Below are positions 16,510 through 47,856 of a stretch of 64,000 nt of DNA, in pieces. Position numbers and translations under genes: made by a program. The stretch's first letter is position 1. Every line of letters begins with the position of its first letter. The DNA is taken from IMG/VR virus record IMGVR_UViG_3300032245_001746, positions 248,001 through 312,000 of that record; one strand, 5' to 3'. The notes beneath the pieces are model-generated. The model did no database searches. It saw only the letters and a list, made by a program, of their open reading frames with translations, and was not told the DNA's origin.

Positions 16510-16553
16510 CCAGCTTTATCAATACCCTAAAGCTGGAAATCGGGATAAATTAG

Positions 16554-16626
16554 TGGTGCCGGTGGGAATCGAACCCACGACCATCGGATTAAAAGTCCGG
16601 TGCTCTACCAACTGAGCTACGACACC
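16554..16626 (-). tRNA. tRNA-Lys(UUU)
   Basis: GGTGTCG/CGGCACC acceptor stem, TAGCTCAGTTGGTAGAGC D arm, CTTTTAA anticodon loop, GTTCGATTC T loop; CCA not encoded. Confidence 0.95.
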
Positions 16627-23920: not shown

Positions 23921-24006
23921 TGTCGGAGACGGGAATCGAACCCGTACGCCCCTTCCAGGACCCAGGATTTTAAGTCCTGTGCGTCTGCCTATTTCGCCAC
24001 TCCGAC
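23921..24006 (-). tRNA. tRNA-Leu(UAA)
   Basis: GTCGGAG/CTCCGAC acceptor, CAGGA-CTTAAAA-TCCTG, long variable arm, GTTCGATTC. Confidence 0.95.
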
Positions 24007-40758: not shown

Positions 40759-41319
40759 TCAAACTTTGTGATCATTTTGAATAATTTCGTCATATTGTAT
40801 TAAGCAACCATTTGAATCTTCAATAAAGATCAGGTTATTATTTTGATCATATTTGCGTTTTTCCCACCAACCATTTGAATCTTCAATAAAGATCAGATTA
40901 TTATTTTGATCATAATCATATTTTACTGAATAATCATTTGAATTTTTATAAAGAATTAGATTATTATTTTGATCATATTTGTGTTTCATGTGAAACGAGT
41001 ATGATCGTTTAATCGTCAGTTCGTTATTAACAATTCCAAATAGTTGATAATATTCTTCTTTTGGAATTTCTCTGATGACACGTAGTTTATTTGTTACAGA
41101 TTTATCACAAGAATGGATACATTCGCCTAAATCTTCAATTTCGAGTAATTTGAAATTATGTTGAATTGAATAATGGTTCAATACGTTAATTGGATTTTTA
41201 CAATAGTGGAATCCATATTTGCACATAACTGGAGTTCTTGGTAATTCGTAGGTTTTTCCGATTTCGAATTTATGATTTAGACAAATGAAATCATAGGTTG
41301 CTTTGAATCCGGTTTTCAT
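40759..41319 (-). CDS. Family B (DUF7666-like + YD-like repeats)
   Basis: MKTGFKATYDF..GFHYC; C-terminal ~21-aa repeats YDQNNNLIFIEDSNG. Confidence 0.8.
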   Translation of the reverse strand: MKTGFKATYDFICLNHKFEIGKTYELPRTPVMCKYGFHYCKNPINVLNHYSIQHNFKLLEIEDLGECIHSCDKSVTNKLRVIREIPKEEYYQLFGIVNNELTIKRSYSFHMKHKYDQNNNLILYKNSNDYSVKYDYDQNNNLIFIEDSNGWWEKRKYDQNNNLIFIEDSNGCLIQYDEIIQNDHKV

Positions 41320-41346: not shown

Positions 41347-41862
41347 CTATTTTTGACCAAATTTGGCATCGATTAACTTATTATTTTGATCATATTCATA
41401 TTTTGACCACAAGCCATTTGCGGATTCACAATAAGTTTCATTATTATTTTCATTAAATTCGTATTTGGTCCAATCACCAAATGAATCTTCATAACGAATA
41501 CGATTATTATTTTCATCAAATGTTTGTTTTGTCCAATAACCAGCTTCATAATTAGTTGTCAATTGATTGTTAATAATTCCAAATAGTTGATAATATTCTT
41601 CTTTTGGAATTTCTCTGATGACACGTAGTTTATTTGTTACAGATTTATCGTATTTGGTGATTGATATGCCAAGATCTTCAATTTCGAGCAAACGAAAAGT
41701 GTGTTTAATTGGATAATAACCAAGAACATCGATTGGATTTTTACAATAATGAAATCCATATTTACAAGGAATTGGAGTTCCTGATAATTCGTAGGTTTTT
41801 CCGATTTCGAATTTATGATTTCTGCAAGAGAAATCGTAGGTTGCTTTGAGTCCAGTTTTCAT
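41347..41862 (-). CDS. Family B protein
   Basis: Same domain and repeats. Confidence 0.8.
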   Translation of the reverse strand: MKTGLKATYDFSCRNHKFEIGKTYELSGTPIPCKYGFHYCKNPIDVLGYYPIKHTFRLLEIEDLGISITKYDKSVTNKLRVIREIPKEEYYQLFGIINNQLTTNYEAGYWTKQTFDENNNRIRYEDSFGDWTKYEFNENNNETYCESANGLWSKYEYDQNNKLIDAKFGQK

Positions 41863-41865
41863 TTG

Positions 41866-42396
41866 TTACTTTCTATCTTTTTGTTTGTGATAAGAGAAAT
41901 AACTAGTTACATTGTTATTTTGATCATATGTACGAATTGAATGATAACCAGATGAATCTTCAATATATGTTAGATTATTTCTTTCATCATATTCATATTT
42001 TAGCCAAGCACCATATGAGTTTTCAAGATAAATCAGATTATTATTTTGATCATATTTGTGTTTTACCCAAATACCATTTAGTCCATTAATAGTCAGTTCA
42101 TTATTAATCATACCAAATAATTCATAATATTCTTCTTTTGGAATTTCTCTTACAACACGTAATTTATTTGTTGCAATTTTATCTTCATGATAGATTGATA
42201 TGCCAATATCTTCAATTTCCAATAGATGGAAATCATTTTGAATTGGATAATATCCAAGAACATCAATTGGTTTGACGCAATAATGAAAACCATATTCGCA
42301 AGGAATTGGAGTTCCTGGTAATTCATAGGTTTTTCCGATTTCGAATTTGTGATCTCTGCAATAGAAATCGCGTGTAGCTTTGAATCCGATTTTCAT
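41866..42396 (-). CDS. Family B protein
   Basis: MKIGFKATRDF...; same repeats. Confidence 0.8.
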   Translation of the reverse strand: MKIGFKATRDFYCRDHKFEIGKTYELPGTPIPCEYGFHYCVKPIDVLGYYPIQNDFHLLEIEDIGISIYHEDKIATNKLRVVREIPKEEYYELFGMINNELTINGLNGIWVKHKYDQNNNLIYLENSYGAWLKYEYDERNNLTYIEDSSGYHSIRTYDQNNNVTSYFSYHKQKDRK

Positions 42397-42975
42397 GATT
42401 TTTTCTTTACTGCATTTAGACAATGGTGGAAATTATTTGCATCACAGCGTTTATTTGGATTCGGATAATATTTTTCGAACCAATTTTCAATCATTTTATG
42501 ATCAATGAGTTCTGATGTTGGATTCCAAAAACAAACGACACAACCGTCTAAAATGCACCAATTAAGGGAGATACAAACTGATCTATCGTCATATTTTCCT
42601 ACAGTTATTAGGAATCCATTAATTTGGTCCCAATTTTCAATTTCTGGATATTGGCAATAACTGCTTTTTTTGCAAAATTTTGACCATAATTCATGGTAAG
42701 CAAAATCATCTGCTTCAACAAGAAATTGTGTAACAGCAATACGACTTTCTGGGTTATTATATTTTTCAAAAAATTCGCGATTCATAATTTTCCCTTTAAA
42801 TCGAATTTAGTTGCAAGATTGAATTTCGAAATATGAAGAGCAGCAATCGCAACCTGGTTCAATTCTTACAACTTGTACTTTTCTGAGTTTAGATCTTTTT
42901 GATCCATGAGGTTTATAGGATTGGACGAATTTTTTTCTTCCGAATTTTTCCAGAGCATCCCAGGGATGATCAATT

Positions 42976-43098
42976 TTAGAAATTGGAAGATTTTTTGGAT
43001 TTACAGCACCTGGAATTCCGTAGTCGATAAGTTTTACCAATTTCAAACTTATAACCTCGGCACACGAAATTATAAGTGGCTTTAAATCCTGTTTTCAT
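42976..43098 (-). pseudogene. Truncated family B 5' fragment fused out of frame to a different gene
   Basis: MKTGFKATYNFVCRGYKFEIGKTY then unrelated sequence overlapping ORF 42807-43046. Confidence 0.75.
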
Positions 43099-43567
43099 TT
43101 GAAATGCTTTCATGTTTAGGCAGCTTTTTGCTCATAAGAGCAAGTTAGACAATATTTATTGTCATTAATAGATATTGTCCAGTCAACACCAACTTTGTTA
43201 TTTCTTGGAGAAAAGAAACAAACTGAATCTGTCAAATGGTTGTCATTAATTCCAGCGTGAATTAATAATCCTTTTAGAGTTCTTGGACCTTGACCAAAAT
43301 AACCCCAACAAACGCCATCGAAAATGCAAAATCCATTTTCTCCAACGAATTTAACTCTTTCATGAAAGTTAGAATAAGTTACACCATTAGATGTTCTTTT
43401 GCTATACCATCGGTATCCAATAATTTCATGAATTTTTCCGAGACGATCAATATGTTTTGGAGCATTTTCTTCAACTTTTGAAGAAGATCCATATTCGTAG
43501 CGATATTTAACCATTATTAAATACTCCAAAAACACAATAAAAGTGAAGACGTATTTATATTGTACAA

Positions 43568-43591
43568 TCAAACTTTGAATCCAGTTTTCAT
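43568..43591 (-). pseudogene. Family B start (MKTGFK) cut off at the element
   Basis: ATG AAA ACT GGA TTC AAA G|TT TGA: six family B codons run directly into element 43559. Confidence 0.7.
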
Positions 43592-43616
43592 GATGTATTT
43601 TCTTTGTTTGATTATA

Positions 43617-44189
43617 CTATAGATCAGTAAAAACTATTCCATCAGGATTAATTTTCAAGTTTGCCAGATTTGATGATGGATGTTTGAAATAAAACATTTC
43701 CCACAAATTATTGTTAAACACTAATTTCATGATTAGTTCTTTATTTTCATTATAGAAATATTCTTGGCATGGTTTTCCTTCGTAAAAAACTTTACGATTT
43801 AAGATATTTCCGTTTTCAAAATAAATTGAGATTTCCATTATCTCAATTTCATTTCGAATAATAAGTGTTCGATTTGATGAATCATAAGAAAAATTTCTTC
43901 CCAATAGATTCATGATTTCATCAGGATTAGTTATTTCTCTTACAATTCGAATGTGATTAGAAAAAGAATAAGATTGATAATGTTCAGTAACTTTGGATAA
44001 GTCTTCGATTTGTAACAATTTAAATGTTGGACAAATCGAGACATAATTAAACATATCTTTTGGATTACGAAAATAAAGTAATCCATTTTTAAATCGTTCA
44101 ATTTTACCTGATACTTGATATTCTTTTCCAATTGACCATTTTGATTCAAAACATTCTTCATTTACTGTTGCTAAATAACCTTTTGACAT
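43617..44189 (-). CDS. Divergent family B protein
   Basis: KGYLAT, FKLLQIEDL, NHIRIVREI. Confidence 0.6.
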   Translation of the reverse strand: MSKGYLATVNEECFESKWSIGKEYQVSGKIERFKNGLLYFRNPKDMFNYVSICPTFKLLQIEDLSKVTEHYQSYSFSNHIRIVREITNPDEIMNLLGRNFSYDSSNRTLIIRNEIEIMEISIYFENGNILNRKVFYEGKPCQEYFYNENKELIMKLVFNNNLWEMFYFKHPSSNLANLKINPDGIVFTDL

Positions 44190-44218: not shown

Positions 44219-44752
44219 TTACATTTTCCTATTAATGCCATTTAAAGCATCTTGCCAATAAGAAAGTGAGGTGGTTAATCTTTTGTTTTCTGTAGAACAG
44301 ATTAATTTGTTTAGAAAATCAAACAATTTTTGAGCAAGTTTTTCTTGACCAAGAATTGTAGCAGAAGCTAAAAATCTTGTAATTCTTAGTGAATTGTGAT
44401 TAAATTCTGCCCATGTGTATAATTGTTTATCCAAATTTGGAAGAATTTGAATGTTGTCATTTTCAAATGAAAGACCAAGAAATTTCAAAAATCTTTTTGA
44501 TGCTTTTTCGAAATTTCGAATTAATTCAAGATCTGTTCGAAATAGTTCGATAGTTTCTCGATCTAACAATGGAGCATCTTTATTAAAAGCGCTTGCTTTT
44601 TCTAAAGGAAAAATAACTTGAATGAAGTTATGGCATTCTTCGAACCAATCATCATTTTGATTCAAAACTTGATCAAAAGTTAAGTTGTAAACTTGTTCAT
44701 TTTTATAAAATGAAATCAATCTTTTATTCAAGCTATTCTCCTTTTTCTTCAA
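44219..44752 (-). CDS. Opioid growth factor receptor (OGFr)-like conserved domain protein
   Basis: HNFIQVIFPL..S.FN..APLL and NHNSLRITRFL. Confidence 0.75.
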   Translation of the reverse strand: MKKKENSLNKRLISFYKNEQVYNLTFDQVLNQNDDWFEECHNFIQVIFPLEKASAFNKDAPLLDRETIELFRTDLELIRNFEKASKRFLKFLGLSFENDNIQILPNLDKQLYTWAEFNHNSLRITRFLASATILGQEKLAQKLFDFLNKLICSTENKRLTTSLSYWQDALNGINRKM

Positions 44753-47343: not shown

Positions 47344-47856
47344 TCAAACTTTACTTACATATTTGCGGTCAATTTCATTATTGTTTTCATCAAATTTTTG
47401 CCAATAGCCATTCGAGTTTTCAAAATAAATTTCATTATTATTTTCATCATATTCGTATTTCATCCAATAATTATCTGAATCTTCATAACGAATACGATTA
47501 TTTCTTTCATCAAATGTTCGTTTTGCCCAATAACCAAATTCATCAGTAGTTGTTAATTGATTATTAACAATTCCAAACAAAGAATAATATTCTTCTTTTG
47601 GTACTTCTCTTACAATTCGGATTTTATTTGTTACTGTTTTATTTCCTTCGGTGATTGATTCACCCAAATCTTCAATTTCCAATAATCGAAAATTATGTTT
47701 AATTGGGTAATAACCAATAACATCAATTGGTTTGATGCAATAATGAAAACCATAATTGCAAGGAATTGGAGTTCCTGGTAATTCGTAAGTTTGACCAATT
47801 TCAAACTTATGATCTATACACATAAAATCGTAGGTAGCTTTAAATCCGGTTTTCAT
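47344..47856 (-). CDS. Family B protein
   Basis: Same domain and repeats; stop inside element 47335. Confidence 0.8.
   Translation of the reverse strand: MKTGFKATYDFMCIDHKFEIGQTYELPGTPIPCNYGFHYCIKPIDVIGYYPIKHNFRLLEIEDLGESITEGNKTVTNKIRIVREVPKEEYYSLFGIVNNQLTTTDEFGYWAKRTFDERNNRIRYEDSDNYWMKYEYDENNNEIYFENSNGYWQKFDENNNEIDRKYVSKV

What the first reader, a model, noticed from the sequence alone, without database searches (positions are those of the whole stretch)
43559..43600. Gene amputated exactly at the element (MKTGFK|V*)
Seen: ATG AAA ACT GGA TTC AAA G matches the start of family B genes (ATG AAA ACC GGA TTC AAA GCA...). It continues straight into the element at a shared AAG, giving a 7-codon stub. 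Inference: a fossil recombination/deletion junction at the element's 5' edge using only ~3-4 nt of identity, which points to a crossover near AAG|TTTG.
Basis: partly seen in the sequence, partly recalled or inferred. Interest (0 to 1): 0.75.

Follow-up and report, generated by a model that had tools for sequence, protein, structure and literature searches.

The report
Deletion scar of a phage gene
A seven-codon mini-gene in a huge, uncultured phage is the leftover start of a multi-copy gene whose body was lost in a roughly 500-base deletion that ends right in front of a promoter-like repeat; relatives still carry the whole gene, so this is ordinary gene-family turnover, though well documented here.

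Summary
On the minus strand, ATGAAAACTGGATTCAAAG (43591-43573) matches the start of the family B (DUF7666) genes 19/19. It runs into the invariant 17-mer AAGTTTGATTGTACAAT and stops at the TGA inside it (MKTGFKV*).

Two riverine-metagenome relatives, 94% identical, have the same upstream gene and the same 25-nt spacer. There the ATG continues as an intact B reading frame. A third relative has an intact 168-aa B gene ending 29 nt before the same element copy and gene X, and the last 8 nt of that gap are ATTCAAAG. So the stub is a deletion scar of about 517 bp.

The crossover most likely used a 7-8 nt direct repeat, ATTYAAAG (B nt 12-19 and the 8 nt in front of the element).

A second amputated B gene lies 475 nt downstream. 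It keeps 72 nt and is fused out of frame into another gene. Its junction is not at an element: that deletion removed an element copy.

The element behaves like a promoter: 78 copies on one strand, often behind terminators, and directly in front of two tRNA genes. It resembles the PeSL cassettes of T4-type phages. Interest is modest.

The parts
43568..43591 (-). Stub ORF MKTGFKV*: the first 19 nt of a family B gene, then GTT TGA supplied by the element
43592..43616 (-). 25-nt spacer with the ribosome-binding region between the stop of the upstream gene and the stub ATG; orthologous to the spacer before the intact B gene in L093/L094 (22/25 identical)
43573..43580 (-). ATTCAAAG: the retained copy of the short direct repeat at the deletion junction; homology of L090 to the window begins here
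43559..43575 (-). Copy of the invariant 17-mer AAGTTTGATTGTACAAT (promoter-like element) in front of gene X
43116..43514 (-). Gene X (132 aa, no known family), first gene downstream of this element copy; single copy, used as the anchor for orthologous loci
43617..44189 (-). Divergent family B member (190 aa, DUF7666) upstream of the stub; the same gene precedes the intact B start in L093/L094 and is frameshifted in L089
43027..43098 (-). Second amputated family B gene: the first 72 nt (24 codons), fused out of frame at 43027/43026
42807..43026 (-). 3' remnant (from about codon 55) of gene Y, which is 127 aa and has its own element copy in relatives L100-L105
40759..42396 (-). Tandem array of three intact family B genes (41866-42396, 41347-41862, 40759-41319). 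The last one ends ..KV* using the TGA inside the next element copy
47344..47856 (-). Another intact family B gene, also ending ..KV* inside an element copy

Best explanation
The stub is the scar of a deletion of about 517 bp that removed the body of a family B (DUF7666 plus YD-like repeats) gene. That gene once lay between the divergent B gene (43617-44189) and the promoter-like element of gene X. The ancestral order was divB, 25-nt spacer, B (about 168 aa), 29-nt gap ending in ATTCAAAG, 17-mer element, gene X. A slip or illegitimate recombination between the direct repeat ATTYAAAG at B nt 12-19 and the ATTCAAAG just before the element left one repeat copy. This fused B codon 6 to the element, whose internal TGA closes the frame (MKTGFKV*). 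Deletions that ran into the 17-mer would have removed the signal in front of gene X, which would explain why the surviving junction sits exactly at its edge (inference). The stub is most likely functionless: relative L089 lacks its ATG and ribosome-binding site. Shown: an intact B 5' end at the stub's position, and an intact B 3' end next to the same element copy, in relatives. Inferred: that both belonged to one ancestral gene, the repeat-mediated mechanism, and the role of selection.
For: Left side: L093/L094 (94% identical to the window over 1295 nt) read divB stop, CATAATCAAGCAAAGAAAATACATT, ATGAAAACCGGATTTAAAG, then CTACTTATGATTTCATGTGC..., that is MKTGFKATYDFMCRGHKFEIGKTY in frame to the contig end. 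Right side: L090 has a 168-aa B ORF (124-630), then TGA ATTTTTTAATTCCAGTCCTAAATTCAAAG, then the element, gene X and the next B gene. Its homology to the window starts at 43580. The B genes of L090 and L093 are 96% identical over their first 73 nt. The repeats in L090 lie 517 nt apart (positions). Read laying on sample X2 shows one contig leaving the window sequence at 43578 and another at 43580, as expected for an undeleted allele. B genes are repeatedly inactivated nearby: a second deletion scar, an R83* nonsense mutation in L100 and a frameshifted divB in L089.
Against: The two ends of the undeleted allele come from different relatives, so no single contig shows divB-B-element-gene X. In L090 the gene upstream of B is another B gene, not divB, so that lineage is rearranged too. 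In both relatives the B start reads ATTTAAAG, not ATTCAAAG, so the repeat may have been 7/8. L089 groups with L093 on the left (97%) and with L090 on the right (93%) yet lacks B. This requires either two independent deletions or recombination between lineages. Its CTGAATTCAAAG matches the stub (11/12) and the L090 gap (10/12) almost equally well. The ATTCAAAG in L090 and L089 could itself descend from an older stub, in which case the homology actually used is unknown.
Confidence: 0.78

Rival explanations
1. Element-mediated recombination of the PeSL type. The conserved 17-mer itself is the exchange point, and the stub arose when a promoter-gene X cassette was joined to a B gene by recombination in or at the element, possibly through a mini-circle intermediate.
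For: The stub is followed by the cassette and then by another B start (B 5' / element-gene X / B 5'), which is what integration through B-start homology would produce. Of 27 pairs of element copies that share flank homology, 25 share it on one side only, with the boundary inside the invariant 17-mer. At least 14 copies form terminator-plus-element composites like PeSLs. PeSL exchange and mini-circles are documented in T4-type phages (PMC2839356, PMC4122927).
Against: There is no element copy at B codon 7, so element-by-element exchange cannot make this junction. L090 has a complete B gene upstream of the same cassette, and L089 and L090 share the same downstream spacer and B start, so the cassette sits between B genes without any insertion. 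No other stub was found at any of the 78 copies. The neighbouring scar is not at an element.
Confidence: 0.12
2. The 7-codon ORF is a functional leader or upstream mini-ORF, kept because its translation into the element modulates expression of gene X.
For: It keeps the same ribosome-binding spacer as the intact B gene of L093, an ATG and an in-frame stop. Twenty-three other ORFs also terminate at the TGA inside the element.
Against: L089, the collinear relative, has lost 24 nt including the ribosome-binding site and the ATG. The sequence is simply the B start. No other element copy has such a mini-ORF derived from a gene start.
Confidence: 0.04
3. Chance resemblance or assembly chimera at a repeated element.
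For: The 17-mer is a repeat that breaks de Bruijn graphs: Logan contigs of other samples end at 43575-43580.
Against: The match is 19/19, and the 25-nt spacer is orthologous as well (E 4e-16). Three independent assemblies agree (IMG/VR record, ENA scaffold of 530,789 bp, Logan contig of 2577 nt with no differences).
Confidence: 0.02

Closest known systems
Deletions between short direct repeats (slipped mispairing or illegitimate recombination), classically mapped in the phage T4 rII region and in bacteria (from my own knowledge, not checked in a paper here)
   Same: One copy of a short repeat (ATTCAAAG) is retained at the junction. The undeleted state has a copy at each end, about 517 nt apart. 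No special sequence machinery is needed.
   Different: The two ends of the undeleted state were seen in two different metagenomic relatives. The repeat is 7/8 in those relatives. The event is inferred, not observed.
PeSLs (promoter-early stem-loops) of T4-type phages: Arbiol et al. 2010 (PMC2839356), Comeau et al. 2014 (PMC4122927)
   Same: A dense array of highly conserved promoter-like motifs, on the coding strand, in a region of small, variable ORFs of a phage with a T4-type capsid protein. Many copies are combined with a stem-loop terminator. [quoted passage not shown] Flank homology switches at the motif.
   Different: The motif here is a single invariant 17-mer with no sigma-70 -35/-10 pair at standard spacing. 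The hairpin lies upstream of the motif rather than inside it, and only in a minority of copies. The junction studied is not an exchange between two motifs. Promoter and terminator activity were not tested.
Birth-and-death turnover of tandem paralogue arrays in large viruses and phages
   Same: Family B gives 11 matches in this record and 34 matches in the related 102-kb contig G001, partly in tandem. Copies have been lost by deletion, nonsense mutation and frameshift in different lineages.
   Different: The function of the family (DUF7666 plus YD-like repeats) is unknown, so what drives the turnover is unknown.

Membership tests
Short-direct-repeat deletion scar | Close relatives carry the undeleted sequence at the same locus | tested here: met
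   L093/L094 show an intact B 5' end after the same upstream gene and spacer. L090 shows an intact B gene upstream of the same element copy and gene X.
Short-direct-repeat deletion scar | The undeleted form has a direct repeat at both deletion ends, and the deleted form keeps exactly one copy | tested here: inconclusive
   ATTTAAAG at B nt 12-19 (L093, L090), ATTCAAAG just before the element (L090, L089), and a single ATTCAAAG in the window. Both copies occur together in one molecule only in L090, whose upstream context differs, and the repeat there is 7/8.
PeSL (promoter-early stem-loop) cassettes | Sigma-70 consensus -35 and -10 boxes | tested here: not met
   The sigma-70 scan does not call the element. 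The 17-mer contains TACAAT, but there is no conserved -35 hexamer 16-18 nt upstream.
PeSL (promoter-early stem-loop) cassettes | A stable stem-loop (terminator or attenuator) forming part of the motif | tested here: inconclusive
   All 14 copies picked for T-rich or shared upstream flanks have an 11-17 bp hairpin plus a T-run about 20 nt upstream. The copy at the stub and two others folded for comparison do not.
PeSL (promoter-early stem-loop) cassettes | Clustered in variable regions of small ORFs of a T4-type phage | tested here: met
   All 78 copies lie in one 56-kb stretch of small minus-strand ORFs. The major capsid protein matches phrog_138, a T4-type major head protein, at E 4e-86.
PeSL (promoter-early stem-loop) cassettes | Indels between close relatives have their end points in two motif copies | tested here: not met
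   For this junction one end is in B codons 4-7, where no motif exists. The neighbouring deletion also has neither end in a motif. Elsewhere, 25 of 27 homologous copy pairs share only one flank, which is consistent with such exchange but is not proof.
Promoter (functional) | Transcripts start just downstream of the motif | not tested
   Indirect evidence only: strand and position in front of ORFs, terminators upstream, and two tRNA genes starting at +24/+25.
Pfam DUF7666 family (family B) | Match above the curated Pfam cut-off | tested here: met
   40759-41319: 61.6 bits. 43617-44189: 35.2 bits. The cut-off is 27. The 6-residue stub itself is too short to score.

The most novel reading that the evidence does not exclude
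The invariant 17-mer is more than a promoter. It may be the preferred exchange point that sets gene boundaries across the early region of a phage of about 530 kb, a PeSL-like shuffling system with a non-sigma-70 motif. Under this reading the stub is one by-product of very frequent recombination at or next to these sites. The high share of upstream ORFs that end inside or against the motif would then reflect repeated joining at it. Of 59 upstream ORFs of at least 35 aa, 39 end there, and 23 use its internal TGA.
Probability: 0.2. Interest if true: 0.55.

Novelty: new member of a known kind. Interest (0 to 1): 0.3.

Why it matters
This is a clean case, supported by relatives, of how huge phages lose copies of an expanded gene family. 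Within 600 nt, two B genes were amputated by separate deletions, and the same genes are hit by a nonsense mutation and a frameshift in sister lineages. It also corrects the idea that the repeated element cuts genes. The position of the junction is better explained by a short flank repeat, together with the need to keep the downstream promoter-like signal. The wider setting may deserve its own study: a 17-nt invariant motif in 78 copies, terminator-motif composites, and gene ends pressed against or inside the motif in an uncultured phage of about 530 kb.

Tried and rejected
- **GenBank phage collection.** Searches in near and distant DNA modes around the locus gave no match. tblastn with a B protein found only remote DUF7666 relatives.
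- **IMG/VR scan for the 16-mer.** It found one related contig with 9 exact copies of the searched 16-mer, G001 (102 kb; 12 copies of the 14-mer with at most one mismatch). G001 shares only family B genes with this region, so it gives no orthologous locus.
- **Scans for this particular element copy.** Exact-pattern scans of JGI metagenome contigs and IMG/VR found nothing.
- **Nearest named record by capsid protein.** LR756511.1 (595 kb, 67% aa identity) does not carry the element.
- **RNA polymerase searches in the record (63% complete).** There was no T7-type polymerase, although that control search matched nothing in any genome. There was no beta-subunit domain either. One small ORF has a sigma-70 region 2 match. 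The polymerase that reads the element remains unknown.
- **Sigma-70 consensus scan.** It does not recognise the element, and the number of hits equals the shuffled expectation.
- **Rfam around the stub.** Nothing relevant.
- **Literature search for the motif string.** No paper.
- **X2 contig upstream of gene X.** This 592-nt contig could not be fetched, because no matching protein record exists, so the right-hand junction in that sample is inferred only from where its alignment stops.
- **Cassette insertion into a B gene.** Considered and judged unlikely; see the rival explanations.

Full report
**Setting**

The window is G000:C1:248001-312000 of a 319,857-bp IMG/VR virus record (28% G+C; CheckV completeness 63%). 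An ENA scaffold of 530,789 bp carries the same locus with identical sequence. The major capsid protein is of the T4 type (phrog_138, E 4e-86). Its nearest named record is LR756511.1, an uncultured phage of 595 kb, at 67% amino-acid identity. Genes around the finding are on the minus strand.

**The observation**

Minus strand 43591-43568 reads ATG AAA ACT GGA TTC AAA GTT TGA. The first 19 nt match the pattern ATGAAAACNGGATTYAAAG exactly. That pattern has six hits with up to 3 mismatches in the window (0.56 expected by chance), and the other five hits are the starts of family B ORFs. Family B proteins are 170-190 aa, with a DUF7666 domain (61.6 bits; cut-off 27) followed by YD-like repeats. A family B protein gives 11 matches in this record and 34 in a related contig. 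Similarity also extends into the ribosome-binding region upstream of the ATG.

**The element**

- TTTGATTGTACAAT has 72 exact copies, or 78 with one mismatch. All are on the minus strand, and all lie within a 56-kb stretch.
- With the three preceding bases it forms a near-invariant 17-mer, AAGTTTGATTGTACAAT, followed five bases later by a weaker GATAT.
- It lies 14-185 nt upstream of ORF starts.
- All 14 copies chosen for T-rich or shared upstream flanks have an 11-17 bp hairpin plus a T-run about 20 nt upstream.
- Two tRNA genes begin at +24/+25 of a copy.
- It is therefore best read as a promoter whose start site lies before +24. This is inferred: transcript ends were not mapped.
- It does not fit the sigma-70 consensus. 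The partial record shows no phage RNA polymerase and only one small sigma-like ORF.
- Of 59 upstream ORFs of at least 35 aa, 39 stop inside or within 6 nt of the 17-mer, and 23 use its internal TGA. These 23 end in ..V*, as the stub does.

**Relatives at the stub**

Gene X (43116-43514) is single-copy and served as the anchor.

- **L093/L094** (Logan contigs from two riverine runs; 94% identical to the window over the OGFr-like gene and the divergent B gene). After the same stop codon come the same 25-nt spacer and ATGAAAACCGGATTTAAAG. The sequence then continues CTACTTATGATTTCATGTGC..., an intact B frame of 24 codons up to the contig end.
- **L090** (JGI contig, 1200 nt). It has an intact 168-aa B gene, then 29 nt ending in ATTCAAAG, then the same element copy, gene X and the next B gene. 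Homology to the window starts at 43580, the first base of ATTCAAAG.
- **L089** (collinear Logan contig, 91% identical). It lacks the B gene and also lacks 24 nt that include the stub's ribosome-binding site and ATG. It keeps CTGAATTCAAAG before the element.
- The read-laying output agrees. In sample X2, one contig leaves the window sequence at 43578 and another at 43580. The source-sample contig spans the stub without a difference.

**Mechanism**

The simplest history is a deletion of about 517 bp between ATTYAAAG at B nt 12-19 and ATTCAAAG in front of the element, which leaves one copy. These positions are 135-142 and 652-659 in L090.

However, the homology used is probably 7-8 nt, and only its last three bases belong to the element. 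The junction most plausibly sits at the element's edge because longer deletions would destroy the signal in front of gene X (inference).

Caveats:
- The two ends of the undeleted form come from different relatives.
- The B gene in L090 is preceded by another B gene, not by divB.
- L089 is closest to L093 on the left (97%) and to L090 on the right (93%). This means either two independent losses or exchange between lineages.

**Do junctions cluster at the element?**

- BLAST of the 70 nt upstream of every copy, against this genome and all fetched relatives, found no second case of a gene start or body running up to the element.
- A second amputated B gene lies just downstream. Its first 72 nt (43098-43027) are fused out of frame to about codon 55 of a 127-aa gene.
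- In relatives L100-L105 that 127-aa gene is intact and has its own element copy. About 668 nt were lost in the window, including that element copy, and the microhomology at the join is at most 1-2 nt.
- In L100 the orthologous B gene carries an R83* nonsense mutation. In L089 the divergent B gene is frameshifted.
- B copies are thus lost often and by several routes, and the element is not required.
- On the other hand, of 27 pairs of element copies with flank homology, 25 share only one flank. This is what exchange within the motif would give, as described for PeSLs in T4-type phages (PMC2839356, PMC4122927). It could also reflect conservation of terminator modules.

**Comparison and verdict**

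The stub is a new example of a known kind: a short-repeat deletion scar in a paralogue array. The element array works like PeSLs, but it fails the sigma-70 criterion and the stem-loop criterion is only partly met, so it should not be filed as a PeSL. The motif string was not found in the literature searched. Interest in the stub itself is modest. The element array is the more unusual feature.

Noticed in passing
window 13386-62606 (G000 261386-317664), minus strand: There are 78 copies of a near-invariant 17-mer, AAGTTTGATTGTACAAT, each followed five bases later by a weaker GATAT. All are on one strand. Of 59 upstream ORFs, 23 use the TGA inside the motif as their stop and so end in ..V*, and 16 more stop within 6 nt of it.
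   Followed up: partly
window 16553-16626 and 23921-24006 (minus strand): tRNA-Lys and tRNA-Leu genes start 24-25 nt after the first T of an element copy (16651, 24030). The motif therefore serves RNA genes as well, and any transcription start must lie before +24.
   Followed up: partly
window 14593-38880, for example upstream of 24267, 16354, 18164, 15903, 21031 and 17886: Composite modules: a GC-rich hairpin of 11-17 bp, a T-run, TACTTAATCAATGAAG, then the element. This terminator-then-promoter layout resembles PeSLs.
   Followed up: partly
window 42807-43098: A second deletion scar. The first 72 nt of a B gene are fused out of frame to the 3' part of a 127-aa gene. That gene is intact in relatives L100-L105 and gives a weak Pfam ArenaCapSnatch hit there. 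An element copy was lost with the deletion.
   Followed up: yes
window 44219-44752 (minus strand): A 177-aa ORF matches Pfam OGFr_N, the conserved region of the opioid growth factor receptor (59 bits; cut-off 22). This is an unusual domain for a phage. It is conserved in relatives L089, L093 and L094.
   Followed up: no
window 21408/21670, 14745/18317, 46314/47348: Pairs of element copies share an identical or near-identical 5' leader, in one pair up to and just past the ATG. They have unrelated upstream flanks and, in the 46314/47348 pair checked, different ORFs. Leaders appear to have been shuffled relative to genes.
   Followed up: partly
G000:C1:1-269 and G001:C1:55900-56114: The first 166 nt of the window's record are 97% identical to an internal stretch of the otherwise very divergent related contig G001. 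This may be a conserved terminal or regulatory sequence.
   Followed up: no
L100 2063-2311: In this relative the B gene upstream of gene Y carries a CGA to TGA nonsense change at codon 83, within otherwise near-identical sequence (2 differences in 577 nt compared with L103).
   Followed up: yes
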